Positions 3,180-48,100 of a stretch of 64,000 bases of DNA are shown piece after piece. How positions within the stretch are numbered: position 1 is the stretch's first letter; every line of letters begins with the position of its first letter. The notes below the pieces were generated by a model, which saw only the letters and a program-made list of their open reading frames with translations, was not told the origin of the DNA and made no database searches. The DNA comes from Dendrobates tinctorius (Eukaryota). The DNA lies in assembly GCF_039654945.1 (NCBI RefSeq), contig NW_027361924.1, forward strand, positions 6,820,001 through 6,884,000. Reading direction: 5' to 3'. Both the position numbers and the translations under genes were made by a program.

Positions 3180-3735
3180 CCGACTACCCGGAAGTGCGCT
3201 CCCGCTGTAAGTGCCGCTTTCTGTCCTCGGAGGGGTTGGTTACTGGTACCTAGATAACTCACCGTGATGCTGTCAGGGTCCCCGGTGCCTGTCACGTGGT
3301 CCGGTGAAGAGGCAGAACGTCTCATCGCTTCCTCCTCCCACCACCCTCTTACGTCACGTGACTTACACAATCCAGGGCGACAAAAACAACAACAACCGCT
3401 GACAGCCGCCCCACGTGACCCAGCTCGGCCAATGAGCGTTCCGGCGGGTCACGTGCCCGCGCTTTTGTTCTCTGCCTGAACGTTGCGGCCAGTGAGGTAT
3501 CTTCCCGCCTTTTCCTATTGGTGGAGTGTGCGGCGCGGAGGAGGCCGCTGATTGGTCGTCGTCCTGTTCGTGAGCGGCTCCGTTTGACGTGTGTGCGGGA
3601 CGCTGCGTGAGGTGCGAGCACGGCGGGCGGGGGTGTTTCCTGTTGTCCCGGCATCCTCTGCGCGGTCAGTATTCCTTCCTATCCCCACATCCTCCGCCTT
3701 CTCCCCGCGCTCCACTGTCGGTAAGATGGCGGCGA
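3180..3735. promoter_or_regulatory. CpG-island bidirectional promoter of GLYR1 (and UBN1)
   Basis: CpG-rich. CACGTG E-boxes at 3293, 3355, 3412, 3450; CCAAT at 3429 and ATTGG at 3517, 3551; ETS-like CCGGAAGT ~3188; YY1-like AAGATGGCGGC 3723-3733 overlapping the ATG. Confidence 0.8.
3263..3400 (-). other. UBN1: Probable non-coding first exon of a divergently transcribed gene (UBN1 by synteny); 5' end approximate
   Basis: Consensus minus-strand donor ACG|GTGAGT (ACTCAC at 3257-3262) inside the CpG-rich promoter. UBN1 is head-to-head with GLYR1 in human. No UBN1 coding sequence is in the window. Confidence 0.45.
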
Positions 3736-3766
3736 CCGTGAGTCTGCGACAAGGAGATCTGGTGTG
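3726..3766 (+). CDS. GLYR1: GLYR1 exon 1 ([14 protein letters not shown])
   Basis: ATG at 3726, donor TG|GTGAGT. Confidence 0.95.
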
Positions 3767-6700
3767 GTGAGTGCTGGGAGGTGGGAACACCGGGCGGGAG
3801 GTCCCTGGAGACGGGCAGGACACCGAGCAGAGGCCGCGGTGTGGGGTCGGCCAGACGGCGAGCTAGACTGGGAGCGCTGTGCATGAGGACGATCACAGCC
3901 GGTCCGGGGATCTAGTGTGAGGGAGTAGGAGGATCCAGGCAGGGGGATCTGGTGTGAGGGAGAAGGAGGGTCCCAGCAGGGCATCTAGTGTGAGGGAGAG
4001 GAAGGGTCCCGGCGGGGGATCTGGTGTGAGGGAGAGGAAGGATCCCAGCGGGGGATCTGGTGTGAGGGAGAGGAAGGATCCCGGCGGGGGATCTGGTGTG
4101 AGGGAGAGGAAGGATCCCGGCGGGGGATCTGGTGTGAGGGAGAGGAAGGATCCCGGCGGGGGATCTGGTGTGAGGGAGAGGAAGGATCCCGGCGGGGGAT
4201 CTGGTGTGAGGGAGAGGAAGGATCCCGGCGGGGGATCTGGTGTGAGGGAGAAGGAGGATCCAGGCAGGGGGATCTGGTGTGAGGGAGAAGGAGGATCCCA
4301 GCAGGGCATCTAGTGTGAGGGAGAGGAAGGGTCCCGGCGGGGGATCTGGTGTGAGGGAGAGGAAGGATCCCGGCGGGGGATCTGGTGTGAGGGAGAGGAA
4401 GGATCCCGGTGGGGGATCTGGTGTGAGGGAGAGGAAGGGTCCCGGCGGGGGATCTGGTGTGAGGGAGAAGGAGGATCCCAGCAGGGCATCTAGTGTGAGG
4501 GAGAGGAAGGGTCCCGGCGGGGGATCTGGTGTGAGGGAGAGGAAGGGTCCCGGCGGGGGATCTGGTGTGAGGGAGAGGAAGGGTCCCGGCGGGGGATCTG
4601 GTGTGAGGGAGAGGAAGGGTCCCGGCGGGGGATCTGGTGTGAGGGAGAGGAAGGGTCCCGGCGGGGGATCTGGTGTGAGGGAGAGGAAGGGTCCCGGCGG
4701 GGGATCTGGTGTCAGGGACGGGTTGTATTAAAGGTCTTTGGTTTAAAACAAGAAATTGGATCTGGAAGGATCTTGTTTGAAGTGATGTGTGAGGTTTTTC
4801 AATCCAGCAAAGCGAATTAAAAGAAAAATTCTCTATTGAGACTTCATTAATATCGTGCCGCGGGCAGAGGAAACGCCTGACATGTTTGGAGTCTGGCCGA
4901 CACTTAGTCATAGGTGAAGTGATCTAGTCAGGGGATCCAGTATTGGGGATTAGTGATGAATTGTATGTGGATCTACTCTGTATTGTGTGGGGGAATCTAA
5001 TGGGGATCCAAGAAGGATTTTGTCAGCTCTCTGTATTAATGGATCTGGTGTTTAATAGATCATTGTGTATTAGGGAATCTAGAAAGGATCCTGCCGCTGG
5101 ATCGAACACAGGAGACGCATTTGTGGCCTGGATATGAATTTATCTTCGTTTTCTGCCGTGCTGGATGTGTTCCCGTTTCTTACCTCCATCTTTCTTATTC
5201 TTTTTAGGGGAAAGCTGGGTCGCTACCCACCATGGCCCGGAAAGGTGAGTGCGTGATGACCGGGTTACGCGCCCGCAATTCTCGTTATCTGTGTCTGTAA
5301 TGCATGTGTCAGCGGGCGCCGTGTACCCACAGACCAGGGGTGTAGAGTGCGCCGGCATCCAGCTGGAGAGGACTTGTTGGCAGGAGATTGCACTCGGTCA
5401 GTAGCTGCGGCAGCGGTCGGCTTTCTGCTCTCACCGCCTTCTACCTTGCTTATAAGATTAGAGACCCCCTTATGTAAGGCTGTCCTTGTGATGTACCAGG
5501 GTTCGCCGTCCTCACCTTTTCTTCTTCTTATCCGCAGATCGTCAATCCACCAAAAGATTTAAAAAAGCCACGAGGAAAAAAATGTCTGTTCGTGAAATTT
5601 TTTGGCACTGAAGATCAGTAAGTATCACCAAGACATGTCACGGGGGCTCTTGCTGATTGGGGATCAGTGATCACATGATGCCCCCAAAATGGGGTCATTG
5701 TCTGATTACAGATTCATAGAAGGTTTGAAGGGAGTTGTAGTGTAATATACTCCAGCACCAACAGAATAGTGAGTGCAGCTCTGGAGTATAATACAGGAGG
5801 TAACTCAGGATCAGTAATGTAATGTATGTACACAGTGACTGCACCAGCAGAATAGTGAGTGCAGCTCTGGGGTATAATACAGGAGGTAACTCAGGATCAG
5901 TAATGTAATGTATGTACACAGTGACTGCACCAGCAGAATAGTGAGTGCAGCTCTGGGGTATAATACAGGAGGTAACTCAGGATCAGTAATGTAATGTATG
6001 TACACAGTGACTGCACCAGCAGAATAGTGAGTGCAGCTCTGGAGTATAATACAGGATGTAACTCAGGATCAGTAATGTAATGTACTGTATGTACACAGTG
6101 ACTGCACCAGCAGAATAGTGAGTGCAGCTCTGGGGTATAATACAGGAGGTAACTCAGGATCAGTAATGTAATGTATGTACACAGTGACTGCACCAGCAGA
6201 ATAGTGAGTGCAGCTCTGGGGTATAATACAGGGTGTAACTCAGGATCAGTAATGTAATGTATGTACACAGTGACTGCACCAGCAGAATAGTGAGTGCAGC
6301 TCTGGAGTATAATACAGGATGTAACTCAGGATCAGTAATGTATGTACACAGTGACTGCACCAGCAGAATAGTGAGTGCAGCTCTGGAGTATAATACGGAG
6401 TATAATACAGGAGGTAACTCAGGATCAGTAATGTATGTACACAGTGACTGCACCAGCAGAATAGTGAGTGCAGCTCTGGAGTATAATACAGGAGGTAACT
6501 CGGGATCAGTAATGTATGTACACAGTGACTGCACCAGCAGAATAGTGAGGGCAGCTCTGGAGTATAATGCAGGAGGTAACTCAGGATCAGTAATGTAATG
6601 TATGTACACAGTGACTGCACCAGCAGAATAGTAAATGCAGCTCTGGAGTATAATACAGGATCAGTAATGTATCTATGGAGTATTTGGTCCATTATCGGTA

Positions 6701-7554
6701 CCTCCTGACTTACAATGTGTTTTCTCTCAGTGCCTGGATTAAGGTGGAGCAGCTGAAGCCTTATAACCCCCACAAGGAGGAAATGATCAAAGCCAACAAA
6801 GGCAAACGCTTCCAGCAAGCAGTGGACGCAGTGGAGGAATTCATAAAGAAAGTGAAGGCGAGACAAGAACAGGTTAATGATAACGGATTTTCTTCCATCT
6901 TTCAGTAGTGATGGACGTCCCTGTACCCATCAGTCCGGAGGTTTATTTACTGCCTTCATTGGGGTTATCAAGGAATGATAATAGCTCTGGATGGATGAGC
7001 CACTGTGAATGGTCATTAGGACAAACGTATTCACTTCTATGGGGATGACGCCTCATATTTCACACCTGTAGTGTTACCCGTAGATTTGCTGTATTTCCCT
7101 CTAGTTGGGTTTCCACTGTCCTTGCCGTGTTCTAGAGCATTTACTGTCCTCTCAGATCGGAGTGTTTTTTGGTGTGATAGGGGGACATTGGGTTAAAATG
7201 AAATAAAGTGCAGTTTGCCTTCATGTTCACCTCGTCTGTTTGCACTTTGCTCCTTACCACAGATATTTAGTTACTCCTCGTGTTTCTGCACATAACGGTG
7301 CCACCATCAGATATAGAGCCACAGCCATTGGGGGCTATTGGGTCACCTCAGTAGCTGCCATCTTGGCACTCCTTTTATATTTTGCAAAGGTATAAACCCC
7401 CCCCCCCCCCCCTTTTAAAAATAAAGAAATAATATCAAGTGTGGTGTCAACTCTTCTGTGTAAATCCAATCAGAATATACAATTACTTAACCCATAAAGA
7501 GAAGCTGGATCGTAACACCAGAATTGAATTTTCTCAGAAAACAAGAATTCCAAT

Positions 7555-7617
<63 letters not shown>

Positions 7618-10600
7618 TTATTATTATATATTATTTTTTTTTTTTTTTTGTTTATCATATGTGTTTGTCAATGGGAAGGTTAAAAAAAAAAAAAACATTA
7701 TGGGAGGAAAAAGTAATTGAAAAATGAAAAAAAAATCCCCTCTCCGGATGGCATTAATGTGACTTAATCTCGCACACAGATCAGTCACTACTTTGTTTTT
7801 TTGCTTCCCCAGAACGCGAGTGATGACAAAGGCAAACAGAGTGGTGGCAAGAAAGCGGAGGGCAAAGGTAAGAAGCCGGCCGGAGAAAAGAAGAAAAAGT
7901 CGTCTGATGCCGGCTCCAGCAAGCCTAAAAAAAGATCCCAAGAACAGAGCCCACGGAAACGCGGAAGACCACCCAAGGAAGACAAGGTGGGTAACAAGCA
8001 CAACTTAGCTGATGCCGCCGACATCCCCAGGTCACTCGCTGCCCTACTGATAGGAGTAGAGGGATGCATCTTTGTAATGAACTGTTGCGGAAGGCGTAAG
8101 AACCAAAAAAAAGTGGAAGCTTTTTACCATAAAATTTTTCAAATGTTTATTTTAATCAGTATAATGCAACAATGCAGAAAAGTATATATGAACAGGGACA
8201 TCAATACAAAATAAAAGCCGCAAATCATTCAGAGAGGGAAACGTATATCTTGCTGGCACCCCAACGCACGTTTCGCTTTGTCCAGGGGATGTATGCAAAA
8301 CGCGCGTTGGGGTGCCTGCCTCCTTCAGGTATAGATACTAATTTTTGTTAGCACATGTCATGAATTGAAATAATTGTTTTTGTATCTCCTTTACTAGTGT
8401 TTCATTTTGCACATGCACCTTAGGCCTGGATCACACTTCCGTTTTTTCAAATCCGTCAAAATCTGTCATTTTCCGTTAAAAAACGGATCCGCCATTTTTT
8501 TTGGAGGATCCATTTTTTTGTCCCATAGACTTCCATTAGCGGCTACCACGGATCCGTAAAAAAAAGATCCGTTTTTTCACACTTTGGCAGATGCAAAAAA
8601 ACGGATGTGTGAAACAGGCCTTATAAGGGATTAACCCTTTGATTAACTCAATACCAGTTTCCTCTAAGATTTATTTTCTGCACATGCACTCTATATATTA
8701 ATCTATGGGAACTTAGCATAGCAATTACTTTTCCTAGTTTTTGAGAAGTATACGTTTCCCTCTTTATTTAGGCCCGTAAATATGTGATATTATTACCTTG
8801 GGAAGCAATTTTCTTGCCCCTTATGTTTATAATTAATATATATCCTTTTATTTGGCCTCTATAACTTCTATGTCATCTGTTTGTGCCAATTAAAACCTAT
8901 TTTTGCAATGGGCGAACATCTTTTTTCTATATTCTGAATGATTTGCGGCTTTTATTTTGTATTGTTGTGCCTGTTCATATATACTTTTTTGCATTGTTGC
9001 ATTATACTGATTTAAAATAAACATTTGAAAAATTTTATGGTAAAAAGCTTCCACATTTTTTCGGTTCTTATGCTATTTTGCAAGTACCACTTGGTAGGAA
9101 AAACATATTATTTGATTAATTGGGGAAGGCGCAGTGTTGGCTCTTTTATTTTCCTGCTTTTTTTTTTTTTTTTTAGAACTCCAGATCCCCACAGCCAAGC
9201 TCGCTGAAGAAGCTGGCAATGAAGACGGTATCTCGATTCAGTTGGCCTCCACCCACAAGTGAAGTAAGAATAGATCAGCGGCGCCTCCGCTCTTGTGATC
9301 ACTGCAGGGGGCACGCACTCATCTGGCCGCTCTCGCGCCTGTGTGCCTACTGCAGACACCACAGGGGGGCTTCACTATTACAATCCTTCTTGTAGTTTAA
9401 AGAATATGATGGACCCGGTAACTATAGATATTGGAGTCGGCTATTAGGATCCGAGTAACTCCCGTAGATGAGCACAGACATCTCGTAAGCACTGACAGAT
9501 AGGCGTGGGTGGGTCCAATGAATGCTACCCGAGCCTGAGGAGGCTAATGAGCCCTGACCACACAATACAGAAGTGGCTTCAGTTCATTGTACCAGTGAAC
9601 AAATGATTAAGTCTTCATCACTTCTGGGGCCACACAAAAAAAGTTTTAATTGTTCAAAATCTTAAAAAAACAAAATCCCCCAAAAGTAAAAATGTTTACT
9701 CCACCCCAGCTCTTAATCCATAAAATCTAGCCAATAAATAAATAAGTTAGTATTTCTGTTTCTCCAATGATCCGAAATGATGAACACGGATTGTTGCAGA
9801 AAAAGAAATGGCAAATTAATGCCACAGGTACCGATAATAAAAATAGTCACCATGTGCCACAATCAGCAAAGGAGGAAAAAAGTTTTAACAATGGAAATCA
9901 AATTTTCTTTCAATTTTTGGGTAGATATAATATTATAGTATATGAAATCCGCAAAAGAAAATTTGCAGTTGTATTTATTTTCCCGACACCCAAGAATAAA
10001 GTTATAGGGTGATTAATATCACACCGTGAGCACTTTCATAGTGAAACTACTGGGGTGTTTGTTTTTTACATCAAGGGAAAAAAATGCTTTTTCTGTACAT
10101 TTTACAGTTAATTAAATGGCGTCATTAAATAGTGTTGGGATACCAGGAGGGGGCGCGATTGTCGTTTTTCTACCTCTCTGACTATGGTGTTGGGATTTGT
10201 GCCGGGCTCTGATCTTGTCTATGGTGAGCCCATACTAGCCGAGGCGATGGTCTCATGTAAGTACTGGTCTTGGGGAACTATCACTCCCAGCAGTTTGCAG
10301 AGCAGCGGTAACGCCGGCCTCCGTTGTTGAGGGAAGCGGCTCAGTTTCTCTCTCTGTTCGGTTGCAGCGTACCTCGGACGACCCGCACTTCAGCCACTTC
10401 CTGCTCAGCCGGACCGAGAAGGTAGGCCGCACCCAGCGTGCGAGAGCAGCACCAGAGGACGGACCCGCGGGGCGGGCCGCCAAGTTTCCTCAGTTCTTTT
10501 ATCGCTCACGTTCTCCGCAGCGACTTTCCAGGGCGTCCGTCACAACACGTAACACTCGGATGGCGGCCGTCTGTCCAGTGAGGGCTAATACAGTCGTCTG

Positions 10601-13600
10601 ACGTCCTGCTACGGTCTCATAGAAATTATAGAAAGGGTGGTCCAGAACGAACAGACCCTATACGACCGCACAATAATTATTCCCCAAGGGTCAGACGATT
10701 TTGAAATGAGAGCAAAAAGTGTGCGACTAATAGAAGGGGAGTAAGGCTCGCTGATTGTGATCTGTAACTATGGCGATGCCTAGATCTAGATAGGAGCTGC
10801 GTGCAGAAAACGGTAGGCAGTCTATATGATCGCTGGTTTTTCTTTTTCGGTGCAAATGATCTGAACGCGTCTCATTTCTGGCCACAGGAGGACACAGCGG
10901 GCGACAGCTGGCTGCTACACAGGCACAGGTTGCTCGGCACGGAGATGGTGTTGAAAAAGGTACGAGCGGTGAAAGCGGCCTGTCCGGCTGCTCACATCTG
11001 ATCCCATCACAAAAAATAGCGGTAAACGTAGAATTGATACCGTGTTAATGTGCTAGAGCCCCTTCAGATGGGACTACCCCCTTTATTAGGTTGCTCATTT
11101 TTGAGGATCTCTGACTCCGATCCGCTCCCTCCAGGGTGGTTACATGTTATGCTTGATTTTTAATCTTGCCTCTGTCCCCAGCCCAGCGTCACGTACCAGG
11201 CCATCAGCAAGCGGCTGAAAGTATCCGAGGAGGTGAGTACGATGCCCCATCACGTGTCCGGTCTGGTCCCTACATCGCCCATCGCTGACATCGATCCCGG
11301 TTTTCTGTTCACAGGACACCGGATCAACATCCATCCAGGCAGCAGACAGCACGGCCATCAACGGCAACATCACCCCCACAGACAAGAAGTATGTCCGCTG
11401 CCTTTCGTGCATTGTTTGCTTAGTTGTGTTTTTTTTTTTTTTTTTTTCCCGTCATTTGTTTAACCTCTGCTTGCAGTCAATGAATGGGAAGATGCCTGTC
11501 CCGAAATGTGCTTAACCCCTTAGTGACCGGGCTGACCAGTGTCACTTTATGTAGTAATCTCTCAACAGATCACATTGATTTTGAGATTGATATGTCACGC
11601 AAAAACATACTTTATGATTATGGCAAATTTGAGTTGATTTATCTTGCATTTATTTAAAAAAAAATATCAGGAATTTTCTATCTTTGAATATTCAGTTAAT
11701 CCAGACAGTCACACTACACACAAACATTAATATATAACTTTTCCTTCATGACGACTTTACATCAGCACCATTTGGAAAATGTTTTGTTTTGGTAGAATTT
11801 TAGAAGGATTGAAAATGTAGCCGTCGTTGTTTACAGGAAATTTAAAAAGCTTATATTTTTTTTTAGGAACTTGTTCAGTTTTGAAGTGACTTTGGGGGTC
11901 CTATATATTGGAAACCTCCAAAAATGATACCATTTTAAAAACTGCACCCACCAACATATTAAAAATTGATATCAGGTAGTTCATTAACCCTTCAAGTGCT
12001 TTTCAGGAATTAATGCAAAGTGACATAACAGGAAAGAAAAAGCCTATCTTTACCACTAAAGTTTTGGTAACTTTTGAACCACTGCAGCCGGCAGACGTTA
12101 AGGTCGTTATTTGGCCATGAACTGCCAATCAACATGTCAGGGTGCCGATGGGGTTAAAGAGGGAGCCCCCACTCTATATTAACCATTCAGATGCTGTAGG
12201 CACTATTGACAGCAGCATTTAAGGGGTTAAGCGGCCATGGGGGGGGGGGGTCACCATCGTGTGACCTCCATATTCCATGATGTTGTGCGGGCACTGGCAG
12301 CATGACAGCCGCAATGTTTGTGTGCCACTGTCGCCTTCTTTGTGTGAATCCGGTCACACCCGTCTTCTGACCCGTTTTCTCGCCTCTTTTTAGGATCGGC
12401 TTTCTCGGGTTGGGCTTGATGGGCAGCGGCATAGTATCCAACCTGCTGAAGATGGGGCACACGGTTACCGTATGGAACCGGACAGCGGAGAAGGTAACGG
12501 CCGCCTTGGGATCGGTCATTGCATCCCATTACACCGGTACGGCGTCAGCACTCGTTCAGGGTTGTAGTCCTTCACTGCGGCGGGGGTTGAGGGGGTGCTT
12601 GCGCGGTGCCAGCGATAAGTCACGTGTGATCTCATACTTCATTGGAATCACTGCAGCGCCCCCGTGTTCAGAGCGGTCAGGGCTGAGCGGTGGCTTCCTC
12701 GTCTGTTACTGACGGCCCTGAGAATATCCATCTCCGTTATATCTCTAAACTAGAACACGCCTGGAGGAATTCACAGTGAAGTGTGGGATCAAGACGAGGA
12801 CAGCAAGGTAAAGACGCTGTTTCATCTCCCTGCCGCCACCATTCTCCTCTGCCAAGGTCGTCGGCCATTATATTAGTTTTTGACTTTTTGAGAAAGATGG
12901 GTAACCGCCAATGTGACCTCTCGACTGGTCCCAGAGCCCCCGGCTTTCCTAGTCTGGTCATTGTACATCCCCAGCGTATCAGTCCTATGTGCGCATGGGT
13001 TATTGCTGGCTTCGGAATGAGTTAACTGAGAATAATCAGTGAGCGCCGTATGGTCCGACTGTGATTTACACTTGCGTTGCAGAGGGGCAGATAAAAGCCG
13101 GCTGTACAGCACCGCTCCTGAGCTCGCCCCATACTCCCTGCACGCGCCCTGTGATGAAAATGATTTACACTGGTCATTAAGGAGGAAAGCAAAAATATAG
13201 AAAAGTTGTGGCGCTTTATGGAGTTTTATATATATTTGTCCTGTATATTATTATTTGTCCTGTGTTGAAAAATGGAAATTTCAGAATGGCCATTTTTTCA
13301 GCCGCTGTTGTTCCTCCCTGGAAAAATGCGCCGTATGTTCTCAAAAATAGAAAAAAACTGCAGAAACATGGAAAGGGGTGAAAGTATCAATGAACCAGCT
13401 GATAATCGTGCCGGAGCGATGTATCTGGGGACACTCGACACTTGTCGTGATATTGGGGGATTCGGCACTACAGTCGGCCTCTTCCCCAGCCTGACGTGGC
13501 TGATAACAGCGAGCCAGAGATCGCACCACCGTGTCTGAGCTGTAGTTTTGCATTCAGTGGTCATTTCTTCTTTAATCCTGACGCTTCTTGTCTCCGTCCC

Positions 13601-16600
13601 TTGCAGTGCGACCTGTTCATTCAGGAAGGAGCTCATTTAGGCAGAACTCCGGCTGAGGTGGTCTCTACCTGTGACATCACGTTTGCCTGTGTGGCGGACC
13701 CCACAGCGGCTAAGGACGTACGTTTTCTCCATGTTGTGGCGTTGTATATGAATGCAGGGTGGTGGCCGCCCTAACATCATTGGGTAATCTCTGGGGGTCC
13801 GGCATGTGTTCGACCATTGCTATGTGGCTCCGGTAGTGGTTGGACCCCTAGTTAGCTGCTGGTGGCCGCGGCGGGGTGCTCCTGCTACCGGACTTGTTCT
13901 TTAATATGGTCATCTCTGCCTTCAGCTGGTGCTGGGACCCAGCGGGGTGCTGCAGGGGATCCGTCCAGGGAAGTGTTACGTGGACATGTCTACGGTGGAC
14001 CCAGAGACAGTGGCTGAGTTGGCACAGGTACCATGCTGTTATCAGTCTGTCATGTGACCTCGTACCCCAGCAGGTGCACCCCTCACCTCTCCTTCCTTCA
14101 GGTCATAGTGTCTCGGGGCGGCCGCTTCCTAGAAGCCCCTGTGGCTGGCAACCAGCAGCTTTCCAATGACGGTATGTTGATGATCCTGGCAGCCGGAGAT
14201 CAAAGCGTCTATGAAGATTGCGCCAGCTGCTTCCAGGCTATGGGCAGGACGTCCTTCTTTTTGGGTAAGCTGATGTTATGTTTGGATTCCATGCTGATAC
14301 CTGAAGGTGATGGCGCCGGCCGTCCTTATAGCTATGATCCTCCATCCTTGCATATAAGCTGGCATGTGGAGGGCAGATGCTGCTTGTGCATCATGGAGGC
14401 TGGCATGTGGAGGGCAAATGCTGCTTGTGCATCATGGAGGCTGGCATATGGAAGGCGAATGCTGATTGTGTGTAATGGAGGCTGGCATGTGGAGGGCAAA
14501 TGCTGCTTGTGCATCATGGAGGCTGGCATATGGAAGGCGAATGCTGATTGTGTGTCATGGAGGCTGGCATATGGAAGGCGAATGCTGATTGTGTCTCATG
14601 GAGGCTGGCATATGGAAGGCGAATGCTGATTGTGTCATGGAGGCTGGCATGTGGAGGATAGATGCTGCTTGTGCATCATGGAGGCTCACGTGGAGGGCAA
14701 ATGCTGATTGTGCATCATGGAGGCTGTCACGTGGAGGGCAAATGCTGATTGTGCGTCATGGAGGCTGGCACGTGGAGGGCAGATGCTGCTTGTGCGTCAT
14801 GGAGGCTGGCATATGGAAGGCGAATGCTGATTGTGTGTCATGGAGGCTGGCATGTGGAGGGCAGATGCTGATTGTGCGTCATGGAGGCTGGCATGTGGAG
14901 GGCAGATGCTGATTGTGCGTCATGGAGGCTGGCATGTGGAGGGCAGATGCTGATTGTGCGTCATGGAGGCTGGCATGTGGAGGGCAGATGCTGATTGTGT
15001 GTCATGGAGGCTGGCATGTGGAGGGCAGATGCTGATTGTGTCATGGAGGCTGACACGTGGAGGGCAGATGCTGCTTGTGCGTCATGGAGGCTGGCACGTG
15101 GCGGGCAGGTGCAGGTGCATCACGGAGCGGACATGTGGAAACAACAACAAAAATTGCGACCATAGATCACCATCTTTAAAAATATATAAATCATCTTTAT
15201 TAAGTCATGGACAAGACAAGACAAAATGGGGAATCTGTACAAAAGGCAACCAAAAGTGCAATAGTGCAAATGCAAAAACGAGCAGAACCAACCACGGTGA
15301 ACCTGAGCTGTAATGAAAAGGCTATTATTAGATATTCCAATCTATATAGGGAGAGGTATATACCAAATCCAAATGGATTCAAAGGGTTAATAAGTGGGAA
15401 ACCTGAACTGCCTTAAATTACTAGGACATCTGCACATGTCCATTATTCTACATAAAAGGGCTAATGCCCATCATTTATTGTCCACATGTGCCTTCCATAT
15501 AGAGGGACTAAGTGTCAGTCAGATCTACGACTACCGCCCCAAGATATAATCAGATATACTAACACAGCACATGTATATAAAAATATAAATAGAGCGGCTA
15601 GATATTCCCAATGCTGCAAAACATGCATATAACCCGGCGGGTCATAAACCCCGATAAACATTACCTCTCTTCAGCTTCAGGATGACCGGGCGGTGTGCTC
15701 GTCTCCCCGACGCGCGTTTCGGAGCAATGGGCTCCTTCCTCAGGCTGGCACGTGGAGGGCAAATGCTGCTTGTGCGTCATGGAGGCTGGCACGTGGAGGG
15801 CAGATGCTGCTTGTGCGTCATGGAGGCTGGCATGTGGAGGGCAGATGCTGCTTGTGTGTCATGGAGGCTGGCACGTGGAGGGCAGGTGCTGCTTGTGCGT
15901 CACGGAGGCTGGCACGTAGAGGGCAGATGCAGGTGCGTCACGGAGGCTGGCACGTGGAGGGCAGATGCAGGTGCATCACGGAGGCTGGCACGTGGAGGGC
16001 AGATGCAGGTGCATCACGGAGGCTGGCACGTGGAGGGCAGATGCAGGTGCATCACGGAGGCTGGCACGTGGAGGGCAGATGCAGGTGCATCACGGAGGCT
16101 GGCACGTGGAGGGCAGATGCAGGTGCATCACGGAGGCTGGCACGTGGAGGGCAGATGCAGGTGCATCACGGAGGCTGGCACGTGGAGGGCAGATGCAGGT
16201 GCATCACGGAGGCTGGCACGTGGAGGGGGGATGCGATGGACTGTAAAAATGTGTATCTCTCTCTTCCAGGCGAAGTGGGTAACGCAGCCCGAATGATGCT
16301 CATCATTAACATGGTTCAGGGCAGCTTCATGGCCACGATAGCGGAGGGCATGACCTTGGCACAGGTGACCGGCCAGTCGCAGCAGACCCTGCTGGACATC
16401 CTGATCCAGAGTCAGCTCTCCAGTATTTTCCTGGACCAAAAGTGCCAAAGTAAGATAGAAATAATGCTGCCATCTCCTTCCCCCTGCTCCATCATCACTC
16501 TGAAGGCCATGTTGTGGTCTCTCCTGACCGCAATGCTGTCCTCCTCCTGACCACAATTGTCTTTTTTTTTTTTTTTTGTTGTCTTTCTCCCCCTCCTCCC

Positions 16601-18765
16601 CAGCTCTTTTTCTCCTCCTCCCCCAGCTCTTTTTCTCCTCCTCCCCCAGCTCTTTTTCTCCTCCTCCCCCAGCTCTTTTTCTCCTCCTCCCCCAGCTCTT
16701 TTTCTCCTCCTCCCCCAGCTCTTTTTCTCCTCCTCCCCCAGCTCTTTTTCTCCTCCTCCCCCAGCTCTTTTTCTCCTCCTCCCCCAGCTCTTTTTCTCCT
16801 CCTCCCCCAGCTCTTTTTCTCCTCCTCCCCCAGCTCTTTTTCTCCTCCTCCTCCTCCCCCAGCTCTTTTTCTCCTCCTCCTCCTCCCCCAGCTTTTTTTC
16901 TCCTCCTCCTCCTCCCCCAGCTCTTTTTCTCCTCCTCCTCCCCCAGCTCTTTTTCTCCTCCTCCTCCCCCAGCTCTTTCTCCTCCTCCTCCCCCAGCTCT
17001 TTTTCTCCTCCTCCTCCCCCAGCTCTTTTTCTCTTCCTCCTCCCCCAGCTCTTTTTCTCTTCCTCCTCCCCCAGCTCTTTTTCTCTTCCTCCTCCCCCAG
17101 CTCTTTTTCTCTTCCTCCTCCCCCAGCTCTTTTTCTCTTCCTCCTCCCCCAGCTCTTTTTCTCTTCCTCCTCCCCCAGCTCTTTTTCTCTTCCTCCTCCC
17201 CCAGCTCTTTTTCTCTTCCTCCTCCCCCAGCTCTTTTTCTCTTCCTCCTCCCCCAGCTCTTTTTCTCTTCCTCCTCCCCCAGCTCTTTTTCTCTTCCTCC
17301 TCCCCCAGCTCTTTTTCTCTTCCTCCTCCCCCAGCTCTTTTTCTCTTCCTCCTCCCCCAGCTCTTTTTCTCTTCCTCCTCCCCCAGCTCTTTTTCTCTTC
17401 CTCCTCCCCCAGCTCTTTTTCTCTTCCTCCTCCCCCAGCTCTTTTTCTCTTCCTCCTCCCCCAGCTCTTTTTCTCTTCCTCCTCCCCCAGCTCTTTTTCT
17501 CCTCCTCCTCCCCAGCTCTCTTTTTTTTCTCCTCCTCCTCCCCAGCTCTTTTTTTTCTCCTCCTCCTCCCCAGCTCTCTTTTTTTTCTCCTCCTCCTCCC
17601 CAGCTCTTTTTTCTCCTCCTCCTCCCCAGCTCTTTTTTCTCCTCCTCCCCAGCTCTTTTTTTCTCCTCCTCCTCCCCAGCTCTTTTTTTCTCCTCCTCCT
17701 CCCCAGCTCTTTTTTTCTCCTCCTCCTCCCCAGCTCTTTTTTTCTCCTCCTCCTCCCCAGCTCTTTTTTTCTCCTCCTCCTCCCCAGCTCTTTTTTTCTC
17801 CTCCTCCTCACCCAGCTCTTTTTTTCTCCTCCTCCTCACCCAGCTCTCTTTTCTCCTCCTCCTCCCCAGCTCTTTTTTCTCCTCCTCCTCCCCAGCTCTT
17901 TTTTCTCCTCCTCCTCCCCAGCTCTCTTTTTTTTTTTTTTTTTTTCTCCTCCAGCTTTTTTTTTTTCTCCTCCTCATCCCCCAGCTCTCTTTTTTTTCTC
18001 CTCCTCCTCAACGCAGCTCTTTTTTTTTTCCCCCTCAGACATCCTGCAGGGGAACTTCAAACCAGACTTCTATCTAAAGTACATACAGAAGGACCTGCGG
18101 CTCGCGATCGCCATGGGAGACTCCGTCAACCACCCCACCCCTATGGCCGCTGCAGCCAACGAGGTGAGGCAGTCTCTGGGGTGGGGAGGTACAATGTTCA
18201 TGGCTTTTAAGTTTTGCATCTCATGCGGCCAGAAATAACCGCAATGCGGAGCCCGGGGCGGCAGTGCTGATCCTGCGTCATATACAGATGGCCCGAAAAT
18301 GCGACCCTGCCTCCTGTGGGCTGATACATGTCTGACGGCTCTTGGAAGAAGGGGAGGGAAAAGAAGGGAAATTGCCGGTGCTGGATTATTCTGGGCACAG
18401 CGCCATCTGTTTTCTAGTGGCGGTGCCTGGTACTGCAGCTCCGTCTCATTGAAGTGAATAGGACTGAGCTTCAGGATCGGCCATCTTATACTTAGTGCGC
18501 TTTTATAGGGGGCGATCCAGGATTACACTATCGTGGTTGGTTGCAGCTCCACCCCTGACACTAGGTTGTGTCTTGTATTGCATCTCAGCCCCATTTAAGT
18601 GAATGGAGCCGAGCCACAATACCTCAGATAATGCACCGGCGCCCCTTGTTTAGAGCGCCCCCGTCACCTCCATGTGTTTCTTTCCGACAGGTCTACAAAA
18701 GAGCGAAAGCATTGGACCAATCTGACAACGACATGTCCGCCGTGTACAGGGCCTACATCCACTAG
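3726..18765 (+). CDS. GLYR1: GLYR1/NPAC (PWWP + AT-hook + LSD2-binding linker + inactive beta-hydroxyacid dehydrogenase domain), 16 coding exons, 1596 nt, 531 aa
   Basis: join(3726-3766,5208-5244,5538-5617,6731-6872,7813-7986,9177-9263,10368-10421,11182-11232,11315-11388,12394-12493,13607-13717,13926-14027,14102-14264,16270-16449,18039-18163,18691-18765). All introns GT-AG with consistent phases; peptide motifs match GLYR1. Confidence 0.97.
3905..4712. repeat. 36-bp minisatellite GGATCTGGTGTGAGGGAGAGGAAGGATCCCGGCGGG in GLYR1 intron 1
   Basis: About 22 tandem units; decayed GGATC-rich continuation to ~5100. Confidence 0.95.
5208..5244 (+). CDS. GLYR1: GLYR1 exon 2 ([16 protein letters not shown] motif)
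   Basis: tttttAG acceptor, AAG|GTGAGT donor. Confidence 0.96.
5538..5617 (+). CDS. GLYR1: GLYR1 exon 3 ([27 protein letters not shown])
   Basis: cgcAG acceptor, CA|GTAAGT donor. Confidence 0.96.
5745..6671. repeat. ~81-86 bp tandem repeat (CAGCAGAATAGTGAGTGCAGCTCTGGAGTATAATACAGG...GGATCAGTAATGTA...) in GLYR1 intron 3
   Basis: About 11 tandem units visible. Confidence 0.93.
6731..6872 (+). CDS. GLYR1: GLYR1 exon 4 ([11 protein letters not shown]...[19 protein letters not shown])
   Basis: ctcAG acceptor, CAG|GTTAAT donor; PWWP C-terminal helix. Confidence 0.95.
7558..7610. repeat. (TA)n microsatellite
   Basis: Uninterrupted TA run. Confidence 0.95.
7813..7986 (+). CDS. GLYR1: GLYR1 exon 5 (Lys-rich, AT-hook PRKRGRPPK)
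   Basis: cccAG acceptor, AAG|GTGGGT donor, 58 codons. Confidence 0.92.
8093..9073. mobile_element. Non-coding inverted-repeat insertion of Penelope-like type with degenerate hammerhead remnants
   Basis: ~140-bp inverted arms 8093-8233 / 8932-9073; back-to-back CCCCAACGCACGTTTCG and CAAAACGCGCGTTGGGG motifs at 8259-8312. Confidence 0.6.
8423..8620. mobile_element. PIF/Harbinger-type MITE nested in the 8093-9073 element
   Basis: Imperfect TIR GGCCTGGATCACAC...GTGTGAAACAGGCC, TTA on both flanks, internal ACGGATCCG repeats. Confidence 0.7.
9177..9263 (+). CDS. GLYR1: GLYR1 exon 6 ([29 protein letters not shown])
   Basis: Long T tract + AG, GAA|GTAAGA donor, 87 nt phase 0-0; divergent linker ending F-x-W-x-P..SE as in orthologues. 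Confidence 0.85.
10368..10421 (+). CDS. GLYR1: GLYR1 exon 7 ([21 protein letters not shown]2/KDM1B-binding motif)
   Basis: Matches human DPHFHHFLLSQTEK; tgcAG and AAG|GTAGGC. Confidence 0.95.
10888..10959 (+). CDS. GLYR1: Candidate in-frame cassette exon of GLYR1 ([24 protein letters not shown])
   Basis: cacAG acceptor, AAG|GTACGA donor, 72 nt, phase 0-0, no stop; no transcript evidence. Confidence 0.4.
11182..11232 (+). CDS. GLYR1: GLYR1 exon 8 ([17 protein letters not shown])
   Basis: cccAG and GAG|GTGAGT; similar to human PAVCYQAITKKLKICEE. Confidence 0.93.
11315..11388 (+). CDS. GLYR1: GLYR1 exon 9 ([24 protein letters not shown])
   Basis: cacAG and AA|GTATGT. Confidence 0.95.
11512..12230. 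mobile_element. Degenerate TTAA-flanked non-autonomous DNA transposon fragment (piggyBac-like ends)
   Basis: Begins TTAACCCCTT and ends AAGGGGTTAA; AT-rich interior unlike the GC-rich flanks. Confidence 0.4.
12394..12493 (+). CDS. GLYR1: GLYR1 exon 10 ([33 protein letters not shown], Rossmann GxGxxG)
   Basis: tttAG and AAG|GTAACG. Confidence 0.97.
13607..13717 (+). CDS. GLYR1: GLYR1 exon 11 ([37 protein letters not shown])
   Basis: tgcAG and GAC|GTACGT. Confidence 0.96.
13926..14027 (+). CDS. GLYR1: GLYR1 exon 12 ([34 protein letters not shown])
   Basis: ttcAG and CAG|GTACCA. Confidence 0.96.
14102..14264 (+). CDS. GLYR1: GLYR1 exon 13 ([17 protein letters not shown]...MGRTSFFL)
   Basis: ttcAG and G|GTAAGC. 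Confidence 0.96.
15140..15744 (-). mobile_element. Non-autonomous Penelope-like/retrozyme-type insertion (~600 bp)
   Basis: AT-rich unique block interrupting a minisatellite. On the minus strand it starts with a hammerhead core and ends with AATAAA (15201-15196) and a T/G-rich tail. Confidence 0.65.
15705..15744 (-). ncRNA. Minimal type I hammerhead ribozyme motif
   Basis: Minus strand: C-CUGAGGA-A-GGAGC-ccauu-GCUCC-GAAA-CGCGCG-UC-GGGG. Perfect 5-bp stem II and palindromic stem III; the 5' strand of stem I is lost at the insertion junction. Confidence 0.7.
16270..16449 (+). CDS. GLYR1: GLYR1 exon 14 ([26 protein letters not shown]...FLDQKCQ)
   Basis: tccAG and A|GTAAGA. Confidence 0.96.
16585..18030 (+). 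repeat. Polypyrimidine-CAG tandem array (22-28 bp unit CTCTTTTTCTCCTCCTCCCCCAG) filling GLYR1 intron 14
   Basis: Roughly 55-60 units, each ending in CAG, running up to the real exon 15 acceptor. Confidence 0.97.
18039..18163 (+). CDS. GLYR1: GLYR1 exon 15 ([41 protein letters not shown])
   Basis: ctcAG and GAG|GTGAGG. Confidence 0.96.
18691..18765 (+). CDS. GLYR1: GLYR1 exon 16, coding part ([24 protein letters not shown])
   Basis: gacAG acceptor, TAG stop; matches the GLYR1 C-terminus. Confidence 0.97.
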
Positions 18766-19515
18766 TTCCTCCATTTCACTCTCCAGGATCCTTCTTCTGG
18801 TTTTCCGCCTCTGTCCTTTTTTTTTTTTTTTCCCCTCCAGATATATATATATATTTTACTCATTTGGCACCAGTGTCTCGTTGTCGGTGAACTGTCGGCA
18901 CGTCGGCTCCTGTCCAGGCTGCGGTGCTGGATCCGCTCCGGCCTTGCACTATTGGCGACAGTTCCTCTGCCGCGCTCTATATCCGTAGTGACCCGTTTTT
19001 ACAAAAGTGGACCCTCCTGGTGCGCAGGACTTGTAGTCGGAGTGACCCCCTCCCCACCCCCGGTGCATGCTCATCTCGAGGACCATCCACTTCACTGCTG
19101 AAGGACACCGAACGTTACCTTGTGGACACCGGAGCGCCACCTTGTGGACACCGGAGCGCCTGTCCTCCAGATGACTACTTTCTTTTAAGATGATTCTCCT
19201 AGTTGTACAGTGCACAAGTTTTTTTTTTATTTTTCTTGTTCTTTTTTTTGCTAGCATCTCCCAAATTTTGTCCACCCATCACCCGGTCGGCCAGTCTCTG
19301 ATCACCTACTTTTTGTTTATCCCCCTATGTACTATTAAGGGCGAGGTGTGGTTGGTGCGTGCAGACTACAACCCTGCGGTTGGTCGTGCACCATATAACA
19401 CGATGGCTTACTGAACTACAACTCCCAGAATGCCCCAATAGCCAATGCCTCTCAAGCTTCTGTAAAACTACAACTCCCAGCATGAGCAGATGGCCAGTGG
19501 CGCCCCAGCTGTGGT

Positions 19516-45156: not shown

Positions 45157-48100
45157 AGTGTACAAGAATATAGCTACTATAATACTGCCCCCTATGTACA
45201 AGAATATAACTACTATAATACTGCCCCCTATATACAAGAATATAACTACTATAATACTGCCCCCTATGTATAAGAATATAACTACTATAATACTGCCACT
45301 ATGTACAAGAATATAACTACTATAATACTGCCCCTATGTACAAGAATATAACTACTATAATACTGCCCCCTATGTACAAGAATATAACTACTATAATACT
45401 GTCCCCTATGGACAAGAATATAACTACTATAATACTGCCCCCTATGTACAAGAATATAACTACTATAATACTGTCCCCTATGGACAAGAATATAACTACT
45501 ATAATACTGCCCCCTATGTACAAGAATATAACTACTATAATACTGCCCCCAATATACAAGAATATAGCTACTATAATACTGCCCCCTATGTACAAGAATA
45601 TAACTACTAGAATACTGCCCCCTATGTACAAGAATATAACTACTATAATACTGCCCCCTATGTACAAGAATATAACTACTATAATACTGCCCATATGTAC
45701 AAGAATATAACTACTATAATACTGCCCCCTATGTACAAGAATATAACTACTATAATACTGCCCCTATGTACAAGAATATAACTACTATAATACTGCCCCT
45801 ATGTACAAGAATATAACTACCATATTACTGCCCTCTATGTACAAGAATATAACTACTATAATACTGCCCCCTATGTACAAGAATATAACTACTATAATAC
45901 TGCCCCTATGTACAAGAATATAACTACTATAATACTGCCCCTATGTACAAGAATATAACTACTATAATACTGCCCCCTATGTACAAGAATATAACTACTA
46001 TAATACTGCCCCTATGTACAAGAATATAACTACTATAATACTGCCCCTATGTACAAGAATATAACTACTATAATACTGCTCCTATATACAAGAATATAAC
46101 TACTATAATACTGCCCCCTATGGACAAGAATATAACTACTATAATACTGCCCCCTATGTACAAGAATATAACTACTATAATACTGCCCCCTATGTACAAG
46201 AATATAGCTACTATAATACTGCCCCCCTATGTACAAGAATATAACTACTATAATACTGCCCCTATGTACAAGAATATAACTACTATATTACTGCTCCTAT
46301 GTACAAGAATATAACTACTAGAATAATGCCCCCTATGTACAAGAATATAACTACTATAATACTGCCCCTATGTACAAGAATATAACTACTATAATACTGC
46401 TCCTATATACAAGAATATAACTACTATAATACTGCCCCCTATGTACAAGAATATAACTACTATAATACTGCCCCCTATGTACAAGAATATAACTACTATA
46501 ATACTTCCCCCCATATACAAGAATATAACTACTAGAATACTGCCCCTATGTACAAGAATATAACTACTAGAATACTGCCCCTATGTACAAGAATATAACT
46601 ACTATAATACTGCCCCCTATGTACAAGAATATAACTACTATAATACTGCCCCCTATGTACAAGAATATAACTACTATAATACTGCTCCTATATACAAGAA
46701 TATAACTGCTATAATACTGCCCCCTATGTACAAGAATATAACTACTATAATACTGCCACTATGTACAAGAATATAACTACTATAATACTGCCCCCTATGT
46801 ACAAGAATATAACTACTAGAATACTGCCCCTATGTACAAGAATATAACTACTAGAATACTGCCTCCTATGTACAAGAATATAACTACTATAATACTGCCC
46901 CCTATGTACAGGAATATAACTATTATAATACTACCCCTATGTATAAGAATATAACTACTATAATACTGCCTCCTATGTACAAGAATATAACTATAATACT
47001 GCCCCCTATGTACAAGAATATAACTACTATAATACTGCCCCCTATGTACAGGAATATAACTACTATAATACTACCCCTATGTACAAGAATATAACTATAA
47101 TACTGCCTCCTATGTACAAGAATATAACTACTATAATACTGCCCCCTATGTACAGGAATATAACTACTATAATACTACCCCTATGTACAAGAATATAACT
47201 ACTATAATACTGCCTCCTATGTACAAGAATATAACTATAATACTGCCCCCTATGTACAAGAATATAACTACTATAATACTGCTCCTATGTACAAGAATAT
47301 AACTACTATAATACTGCCTCCTATGTACAAGAATATAACTACTATAATACTGCCCCCTATGTACAGGAATATAACTACTATAATACTACCCCTATGTATA
47401 AGAATATAACTACTATAATACTGCCCCCTATGTACAAGAATATAGTAGAATACTGCCCCTATGTACAAGAATATAACTACTAGAATACTGCCCCCTATGT
47501 ACAAGAATATAACTACTAGAATACTGCCCCTATGTACAAGAATATAACTACTATAATACTGCCTCCTATGTACAAGAATATAACTACTATAATACTGCCC
47601 CCTATGTACAGGAATATAACTACTATAATACTACCCCTATGTATAAGAATATAACTACTATAATACTGCCCCTATGTACAAGAATATAACTACTATAATA
47701 CTGCCCCCTATGAACAAGAATATAACTACTGTAATACTGCTCCTATGTACAAGAATATAACTGCTATAATACTGCCCCCTATGTACAAGAATATAACTAC
47801 TGTAATACTGCCCCTATGTACAAGAATATAACTACTATAATACTGCCCCCTATGTACAAGAATATAACTACTATAATACTGCCTCCTATGTACAAGAATA
47901 TAACTACTATAATACTGCCCCCTATGTACAAGAATATAACTACTATAATACTGCCCCTATGTACAAGAATATAACTACTATAATACTGCCCCTATGTACA
48001 AGAATATAACTACTATAATACTGCCCCTATGTACAAGAATATAACTACTATAATACTGCCCCCTATGTACAAGAATATAACTACTATAATACTGCCTCCT

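What the first reader, a model, noticed from the sequence alone, without database searches (positions are those of the whole stretch)
16585..18038. GLYR1 intron 14 is an array of about 55-60 tandem 3' splice acceptors
Seen: each 22-28 bp unit is a pure pyrimidine tract ending in CCCCAG on the sense strand, i.e. an amplified acceptor, ending at the real one (18038). Almost the only A in the array is that of CAG. Branch-like motifs occur only near the end: CTCAC ~17807 and ~17835, CTCAT ~17973, and CTCAAC 18007-18012, about 27 nt before the used AG. The array has no stop in any frame and one frame reads straight into exon 15. Inference: branch-point scarcity explains why the last AG wins. Decoys may sequester U2AF/PTB, allow stepwise splicing, or occasionally insert S/P/L/F-rich stretches. 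The strand-skewed pyrimidine/purine tract is also triplex (H-DNA)-prone.
Basis: partly seen in the sequence, partly recalled or inferred. Interest (0 to 1): 0.75.

Follow-up and report, generated by a model that had tools for sequence, protein, structure and literature searches.

The report
Minisatellite of 56 copied splice acceptors
In the dyeing poison frog, the pyrimidine tract in front of one GLYR1 exon has been copied in tandem 56 times, each copy ending in CAG, yet the assembled transcripts examined are spliced only at the last copy; it is a locally born intronic minisatellite and a natural test of how the right acceptor is picked, with no sign of a new function.

Summary
Window 16550-18038 holds 56 tandem units that consist of a pyrimidine tract ending in CAG. 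They end exactly at the acceptor of the GLYR1/N-PAC exon 18039-18163.

The window is Dendrobates tinctorius. Spliced transcript contigs from four runs join 16449 to 18039. All five NCBI isoforms agree at this junction.

Orthologous introns explain the origin. The intron is 89 bp in Bufo and 126 bp in Lithobates. Ranitomeya has a related 0.4-0.6 kb pyrimidine array with only the last three CAGs, and these align with the last three of the window. Anomaloglossus has an unrelated array without AG elsewhere in the intron. The array is therefore a lineage-specific expansion of the polypyrimidine tract and acceptor, in a region that is 49% minisatellite.

Branch-point scarcity fits most units. However, two perfect CTGAC motifs plus a T16 run lie just before the first CAG, so that site is an unexplained potential competitor. 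Stepwise splicing is excluded because the array has no GT. Factor sequestration, inserted peptides and H-DNA remain untested.

The closest known cases are the human F7 and ABCA7 VNTRs of copied splice donors. First readers of this scan noted similar donor arrays in other genes of this genome; these notes are unchecked.

The parts
16270..16449 (+). GLYR1/N-PAC exon upstream of the array. It ends ...FLDQKCQ plus the first base of the Asn codon.
   Evidence: It matches PDB 2uyy residues 192-250. The acceptor CCAG|GC at 16269/16270 was read. Its last 30 nt appear as the loose end joined to 18039 in four runs.
16450..18038 (+). Second-to-last intron of GLYR1, 1589 nt, GTAAGA...CAG, 90% pyrimidine.
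   Evidence: Orthologous introns are 89 nt in Bufo bufo, 126 nt in Lithobates pipiens, 408 nt in Ranitomeya variabilis, 615/632 nt in R. imitator and 1465 nt in Anomaloglossus.
16450..16561 (+). Unique 5' part of the intron, homologous to the Ranitomeya and Bufo introns. It holds a local duplication that carries two CTGAC branch-point consensus motifs at 16524-16528 and 16547-16551.
   Evidence: Alignment A2. The yUnAy scan finds perfect matches with the branch A at 16527 and 16550.
16562..16603 (+). T16 run (16562-16577) and the degenerate 5' edge of the array, ending in the first CAG (16601-16603). Together with the CTGAC motifs this forms a complete branch point, tract and AG module 154 nt from the donor.
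16604..17921 (+). Homogeneous core of the array, units 1-51. It includes 10 identical 23-nt units (16604-16833) and 18 identical 26-nt units (17023-17490). The T-runs are 3-8 nt long and the only A in each unit is that of the CAG, except in units 47-48.
17807..17839 (+). Two CTCAC motifs (branch A at 17810 and 17838) in units 47 and 48. The first AG beyond the immediately adjacent one lies 33 and 31 nt downstream (17843, 17869).
17922..18016 (+). Degenerate 3' units 52-54, with T19, T11 and T8 runs. They include CTCAT (A at 17976) and CTCAAC (18007-18012, A at 18010/18011), the likely working branch point. The AG at 18015-18016 lies only 4-6 nt after it. Units 53 and 54 align to the third-from-last and second-to-last Ranitomeya units.
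   Evidence: Alignment A3 shows CTCACCACAG at the same place in both Ranitomeya species.
18017..18038 (+). Terminal unit, which is the acceptor in use: CTC, T10, C5, TCAG.
   Evidence: Contigs of runs X1, X2, X20 and X5 begin matching at 18039 and carry the end of exon 14 in front. This unit is orthologous to the last Ranitomeya unit.
18039..18163 (+). GLYR1 exon downstream of the array (N-ILQGNF...AAANE).
   Evidence: It matches PDB 2uyy residues 252-292. A joint 18161 to 18689 (cut +2, GT..AG) to the last exon is present in all four runs.

Best explanation
This is a lineage-specific intronic minisatellite. It arose by repeated tandem duplication of the polypyrimidine tract and acceptor segment of an ancestrally tiny GLYR1 intron of roughly 90-130 nt.

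A short pyrimidine array with three terminal CAG units already existed in the common ancestor of Dendrobates and Ranitomeya. In the Dendrobates tinctorius lineage the unit that was amplified happened to carry the CAG. That gave 55 extra acceptor-like units. In Ranitomeya, units without AG were amplified instead.

The array is most likely a neutral or slightly costly by-product of the heavy minisatellite formation in this genome region. It is probably not a device.

Splicing stays accurate for several inferred reasons:
- The working branch point (CTCAAC; CTCACC in Ranitomeya) lies in the second-to-last unit, 27-28 nt before the last AG.
- The AG 4-6 nt after that branch point is too close to be used.
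- The last unit offers an unbroken U10C5 tract.
- Most other units have no adenosine except in CAG, only U5 runs, and no GU that could let a partly spliced product be rescued.
- Closeness to the exon (exon definition) probably also favours the last site.

Shown here: the anatomy, the junction used, and the origin by comparison with other frogs. Inferred: which adenosine branches, and why the first CAG is not used.
For: Anatomy.

Junction 16449|18039: spliced contigs in four runs from three studies and two organisms, protein homology, and all five NCBI D. tinctorius isoforms, which are identical at QKCQ|NILQG.

Species: locus L007 of assembly GCA_039654945.1 is identical to window 3226-19265.

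Origin:
- Intron lengths are 89, 126, 408, 615/632, 1465 and 1589 nt, with 3, 1, 3, 3/3, 2 and 56 CAGs, for Bufo, Lithobates, R. variabilis, R. imitator, Anomaloglossus and the window.
- The array sits between the conserved ...GGCCTC and the acceptor.
- The last three CAG units align between Dendrobates and Ranitomeya.
- The Anomaloglossus array has a different 33-nt unit at a different place in the intron.

Context: 48.7% of the window is tandem arrays. The previous intron is 2005 nt here and 191 nt in R. imitator.

Branch points. Absence of GT.

Rule that AGs within 6 nt of the branch point are tolerated and that the first AG further downstream is used: PMC9284458.
Against: - The first CAG (16603) has two perfect CTGAC motifs and a T16 tract upstream. 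On paper it looks at least as good as the real site, and nothing found here explains its silence.
- Only assembled contigs were available. They drop rare isoforms.
Low-level use of decoy AGs, or intron retention, is therefore not excluded.
- Blocks of 10 and 18 identical units show recent turnover. That says nothing for or against selection.
- Ranitomeya units carry a G where the Dendrobates unit has AG. This could mean the A was purged there, which would imply that decoy AGs have a cost.
Confidence: 0.75

Rival explanations
1. Functional decoy array. The 55 extra pyrimidine-tract-plus-AG units load U2AF, PTB or poly(C)-binding proteins, or engage U2 non-productively. This would slow removal of the intron or cause its retention, so that GLYR1 output depends on array length.
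For: The array has a dense supply of motifs: 71 TCTT, 91 CCCC and 110 TTTTT windows in 1.45 kb. Decoy 3' splice sites combined with PTB sites, and decoy exons, are known to regulate splicing or retention (PMC2082412 and PMC6097662, abstracts). The repeat RNA PNCTR sequesters PTBP1 (PMC6224606).
Against: No retention or alternative contig was seen in 17984-18038 in four runs. Sister lineages carry arrays of similar size with no AG at all, and the outgroups have a 90-130 nt intron, so no conserved function is attached to the AGs. Half of the window consists of unrelated arrays.
Confidence: 0.1
2. Real alternative acceptors. Some upstream CAGs are used at a meaningful rate. The best candidates are 16603 (ancestral CTGAC branch points plus T16), 18016, 17843 and 17869. 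Their use would give frameshifted or NMD-targeted mRNAs, or in-frame S/P/L/F-rich insertions in the dehydrogenase domain.
For: These sites have complete branch point, tract and AG modules. 17 upstream AGs are in frame, 19 give a stop 89 nt before the last junction, and 19 give a stop 32 nt into the last exon. Expanded CAG repeats can act as acceptors (bioRxiv 10.1101/2023.10.16.562581).
Against: All contigs and all annotated isoforms use 18038. An insertion would split a conserved domain that aligns to the human protein without a gap.
Confidence: 0.12
3. A dispersed satellite or transposon-borne repeat landed in the intron and has nothing to do with the acceptor.
For: The genome is very repeat-rich (PMC11152451), and the window holds many arrays.
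Against: The unit is absent from the rest of the window. The array occupies the ancestral pyrimidine tract, and its last units are orthologous to those of Ranitomeya. No transposon ends flank it. The whole genome could not be scanned here.
Confidence: 0.03

Closest known systems
Human F7 intron 7 minisatellite (37-bp VNTR whose first element spans the exon 7/intron 7 boundary; PMC1557585)
   Same: A minisatellite abuts an exon, so the authentic splice site is one end unit of a row of near-identical pseudo-sites. The exon-proximal site is used and the others stay silent.
   Different: F7 amplifies a 5' splice site with a handful of units. Here a 3' splice site is amplified 56-fold. 3' site choice also depends on a branch point, which most units here lack. 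Silence of the pseudo-sites was shown by mutagenesis in F7, but only by contigs here.
Human ABCA7 intron 18 VNTR (25-bp unit starting at the donor GT; about 12-427 units; PMC5954066)
   Same: A long intronic VNTR starts at a splice site and carries a copy of it in each unit.
   Different: It is again on the donor side. In ABCA7, array length alters splicing, and a cryptic donor one unit into the array is used. No such effect is shown here.
AG exclusion zone and first-AG-after-branch-point rule (PMC1431707, PMC9284458)
   Same: The last unit obeys the rule. The branch-like CTCAAC is followed by an AG 4-6 nt later that is tolerated, then an AG-free 21-nt tract, then the AG that is used. Ranitomeya keeps an AG-free stretch of about 0.5 kb.
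   Different: The D. tinctorius intron is the opposite of an exclusion zone: it has 55 AGs upstream of the working branch point.
Decoy 3' splice site elements (caspase-2 In100, PMC2082412) and decoy exons that promote retention (PMC6097662)
   Same: Intronic acceptor-like sequences that are not used as acceptors.
   Different: Those are single, conserved, experimentally defined regulatory elements. This is a species-specific array with no shown effect.
Expanded CAG repeats acting as splice acceptors (bioRxiv 10.1101/2023.10.16.562581)
   Same: A repeat supplies many AGs that could accept a nearby donor.
   Different: That is a pure trinucleotide repeat used aberrantly in disease constructs. 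Here each AG has its own pyrimidine tract, yet none of the extra ones is seen in use.

Membership tests
Minisatellite / VNTR | Head-to-tail units of about 10-100 bp at a single locus | tested here: met
   56 units of 22-33 nt (the first is 54 nt), 95% matches. The unit is absent elsewhere in the window.
Minisatellite / VNTR | Unit number varies between individuals or close lineages | tested here: inconclusive
   The orthologous array is 615 versus 632 nt in two R. imitator assemblies and 408 nt in R. variabilis. Variation within D. tinctorius could not be tested.
VNTR spanning a splice site (F7 intron 7 / ABCA7 intron 18 type) | The array ends exactly at the exon boundary and the authentic site is its terminal unit | tested here: met
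   The last unit, 18017-18038, ends at the AG in use; the exon starts at 18039.
VNTR spanning a splice site (F7 intron 7 / ABCA7 intron 18 type) | Pseudo-sites stay silent in normal transcripts | tested here: inconclusive
   Only the junction 16449|18039 appears in contigs of four runs, and there is no contig in 17984-18038.
Complete 3' splice site (for each unit) | Pyrimidine tract followed by YAG | tested here: met
   All 56 units qualify; 51 end in CCCCAG.
Complete 3' splice site (for each unit) | Branch-point adenosine in a yUnAy context about 18-40 nt upstream | tested here: not met
   This holds only for AGs 17843, 17869 and 18016 (perfect motif 31-40 nt upstream). AG 18038 has CTCAAC, 27-28 nt upstream, which scores 2 of 3 on the pattern. 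The first AG, 16603, has perfect CTGAC motifs but at 53 and 76 nt, outside this range. The other units have no A except that of CAG, which scores 1 of 3.
Recursive (stepwise) splice sites | The AG is directly followed by GU, so that a donor is regenerated | tested here: not met
   There are 0 GT in 16585-18038, and every CAG is followed by CT.
NAGNAG tandem acceptors | Two AGs 3 nt apart | tested here: not met
   The smallest spacing between CAGs is 22 nt.
H-DNA (triplex)-forming tract | Homopyrimidine/homopurine mirror repeat with arms of 10 nt or more | tested here: met
   There are 786 mirror 10-mer arm pairs with arms up to 15 nt. Pure pyrimidine runs have a median of 24 nt and a maximum of 31 nt.
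H-DNA (triplex)-forming tract | Triplex actually forms in supercoiled DNA | not testable with these tools
   This needs chemical or enzymatic probing.

The most novel reading that the evidence does not exclude
The decoy acceptors are not inert. The first CAG, which is served by the ancestral CTGAC branch points and a T16 tract, and a few 3' units capture a measurable share of transcripts, or stall the spliceosome. GLYR1 output in D. tinctorius would then depend on the length of a fast-evolving array. The G-without-A units of Ranitomeya would be what remains after selection purged such AGs. Together with the donor-side arrays that first readers noted in other genes of this genome, this would make splice-site-seeded minisatellites a recurrent source of variation in gene dosage in poison frogs.
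Probability: 0.1. Interest if true: 0.6.

Novelty: new variant of a known kind. Interest (0 to 1): 0.38.

Why it matters
It is the acceptor-side mirror image of the human F7 and ABCA7 splice-site VNTRs, and it is far larger. Nature has placed 55 acceptor-like copies, including a few with their own branch point, between a donor and the real acceptor of a conserved housekeeping gene, and the transcript contigs examined show only the correct junction. That makes it a ready-made substrate for testing how branch-point position, uridine-run length, AG scanning and exon definition rank in 3' splice-site choice.

The series of frogs also shows step by step how a 90-nt intron grows to 1.6 kb by locally born repeats. 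The D. tinctorius genome paper explains gene size by transposons and does not mention tandem repeats. No new mechanism is demonstrated here.

Tried and rejected
Only 17790-18900 could be laid, and 17790-17983 was skipped there.
- No listed run is on record as RNA. The RNA origin of X1, X2, X20 and X5 was inferred from their spliced joints.
- Look-ups of P0008, P0006, P0098 and P0073 found no gene record, because they are not the longest isoforms. The longest isoforms were obtained through.
- Searches of earlier findings by words and by sequence were blank.
- Stepwise splicing was rejected because the array has no GT.
- A dispersed-repeat origin was rejected by comparison with other frogs, but the whole genome could not be scanned.
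- The 18-residue length difference between NCBI isoforms was checked as a possible use of AG 17984, which would add 54 nt. It is instead due to two cassette exons elsewhere in the gene.
- No splice-site or branch-point scoring program was available. Only the yUnAy pattern and T-run lengths were used.

Full report
**What is there**

The sequence between 16550 and 18038 is a tandem array on the sense strand of GLYR1 (also called N-PAC). Tandem Repeats Finder gives 16584-17930, period 26, 52.1 copies, 95% matches.

Cutting after every CAG gives 56 units:
- a 54-nt edge unit containing a T16 run;
- ten identical 23-nt units (16604-16833);
- a few 29-, 26- and 24-nt units;
- eighteen identical 26-nt units (17023-17490);
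- sixteen units of 23-30 nt ending in CCCCAG with T4-T8 runs;
- four degenerate units at the 3' end, the last of which (18017-18038) ends at the intron/exon boundary.

In 16585-18038 there are 61 A's. 56 of them are the A of a CAG. The others are at 17810, 17838, 17976, 18010 and 18011. There is no GT, TAA, TAG or TGA in the array. The unit occurs nowhere else in the window.

**Gene, species and the junction used**

The flanking exons match the solved human N-PAC dehydrogenase domain (2uyy) at residues 192-250 and 252-292. Residue 251 is split by the intron.

A word search with the downstream exon returned N-PAC proteins of several frogs. The D. tinctorius protein is 100% identical over the variable exons. 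The D. tinctorius locus L007 (GCA_039654945.1) is letter-for-letter identical to window 3226-19265. The window is therefore Dendrobates tinctorius.

Exon bounds, corrected, are 16270-16449 and 18039-18163. The last exon starts at 18691.

On 17790-18900, contigs of four runs (three of organism A and one of a close relative, from three studies) start matching at 18039. In front they carry the last 30 nt of the upstream exon. They also skip the next intron at GT..AG, which shows they derive from RNA. No contig covers 17984-18038.

All five NCBI isoforms of the gene read QKCQ|NILQG. Their 18-residue differences come from two cassette exons elsewhere. The last AG is the acceptor. Minor isoforms cannot be excluded, because contigs drop rare forms.

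**Where the array came from**

The same intron was fetched from other frogs and located with the window's exons.

| Species | Intron length (nt) | CAGs in intron |
|---|---|---|
| Bufo bufo | 89 | 3 |
| Lithobates pipiens | 126 | 1 |
| Ranitomeya variabilis | 408 | 3 |
| Ranitomeya imitator (two assemblies) | 615 and 632 | 3 and 3 |
| Anomaloglossus baeobatrachus | 1465 | 2 |
| Window (D. tinctorius) | 1589 | 56 |

(Counts.)

In Bufo the conserved stretch ending ...GGCCTC is followed by a 20-nt pyrimidine tract and CAG. In Ranitomeya and Dendrobates the array lies exactly between that stretch and the acceptor.

The Ranitomeya arrays are built from related units: a T-run followed by CTCC/TCC repeats, with long (TCC)n runs. 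They have no AG except in the last three units. Those three align with the last three units of the window, including CTCACCACAG opposite CTCAACGCAG.

Anomaloglossus has a different 33-nt unit without AG. It lies in the 5' part of the intron, with 93 nt of unique sequence before the acceptor.

The simplest reading is this. The intron was tiny. A short array grew out of the pyrimidine tract and acceptor before Dendrobates and Ranitomeya split. Afterwards different unit variants were amplified in each lineage, and only the D. tinctorius variant carries the CAG.

The surroundings fit this picture. 48.7% of the window is tandem arrays of unrelated units. The previous intron is 2005 nt here against 191 nt in R. 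imitator. Other introns of the Anomaloglossus gene have arrays of their own.

**Why the last AG is used (inference)**

A scan for the vertebrate branch pattern yUnAy finds only five perfect matches in the intron:
- CTGAC twice, just 5' of the array (A at 16527 and 16550);
- CTCAC at 17810 and 17838;
- CTCAT at 17976.

The CTCAAC at 18007-18012 scores two of three, and both Ranitomeya species have CTCACC at the same place. The 55 other array A's that were scored are CAG A's, each scoring one of three.

With a branch at 18010/18011, the AG at 18015-18016 lies within the 6-nt zone where AGs are tolerated (PMC9284458). The next AG is 18037-18038, after an unbroken T10C5 tract.

It does not hold for the first CAG (16603). 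That site has two consensus branch points 53 and 76 nt upstream and a T16 run, and it would define a 154-nt intron. It also does not hold for 17843, 17869 and 18016, which lie 31-40 nt after perfect motifs. Exon definition and the weak U5 tracts of the core units may contribute, but this was not tested.

**Consequences of mis-use**

If an upstream AG were used, nothing could remove the extra sequence later, since the array has no GU. Of the 55 upstream AGs:
- 17 would give in-frame S/P/L/F-rich insertions of 18 to 463 residues inside the dehydrogenase domain;
- 19 would give a stop 89 nt before the last junction, a likely NMD target;
- 19 would give a frameshift with a stop 32 nt into the last exon.

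**Other claims**

The array has many UCUU and C-rich motifs, and mirror repeats with arms up to 15 nt. Binding of PTB, U2AF or PCBP, and triplex formation, are therefore possible, but nothing here tests them.

**Comparison with known cases**

The closest precedents are human VNTRs that start at a donor site and repeat it:
- F7 intron 7, where the pseudo-donors are functional but silent (PMC1557585);
- ABCA7 intron 18, where length affects splicing (PMC5954066).

I found no description of the acceptor-side equivalent in the searches made. The D. tinctorius genome paper does not mention tandem repeats. First readers of this scan noted arrays of amplified donors in other genes of this genome; those notes are unchecked.

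**Verdict**

The feature is real and well described. Its origin is now explained as a locally born minisatellite of copied acceptors. The functional ideas are unproven, and one of them, stepwise splicing, is excluded. It is a curiosity with value as a natural splicing substrate, not a new mechanism.

Noticed in passing
window 16524-16603: Two perfect CTGAC branch-point motifs in a short local duplication, then a T16 run and the first CAG of the array. CTGACCGC also occurs 18 nt before the acceptor in Anomaloglossus, so it may be the ancestral branch point.
   Followed up: partly
window 1-64000: At least 13 separate minisatellite arrays with unrelated units cover 31,184 of 64,000 bases (48.7%). 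The largest are 45159-53856 (36-nt unit, 245 copies) and 55399-64000 (66-nt unit, running off the window).
   Followed up: partly
window 14265-16269; L004 10446-10636: The previous GLYR1 intron is 2005 nt in D. tinctorius, filled by 41-nt and 38-nt arrays. It is only 191 nt in Ranitomeya imitator.
   Followed up: partly
window 3906-4718 and 5755-6660; L004 689-1901 and 3021-4596: The 36-nt and 86-nt arrays in the 5' introns of GLYR1 are shared with Ranitomeya imitator, with near-identical consensus units. They are therefore older than the acceptor array's expansion.
   Followed up: partly
L002 64107-65442 and 65947-67127: Anomaloglossus baeobatrachus has its own arrays in the same intron (33-nt unit, 37 copies, no AG) and in the next intron (25-nt unit, 47 copies). 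This points to independent births of minisatellites in the same small introns.
   Followed up: partly
L001 11735-12349 versus L004 10817-11448: Two Ranitomeya imitator assemblies differ in the length of the orthologous array (615 versus 632 nt). The cause is either allelic variation or an assembly difference.
   Followed up: no
L005 11685-12092: Ranitomeya variabilis units read CCCCCGCTC where the D. tinctorius unit reads CCCCCAGCTC. They have the G but not the A. The direction of the change is unknown; one possibility is that decoy AGs were purged.
   Followed up: no
window 10365-10421 and 12754-12852: Two 18-residue cassette exons account for the NCBI isoform differences in D. tinctorius N-PAC. 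The second lies inside the dehydrogenase domain.
   Followed up: no
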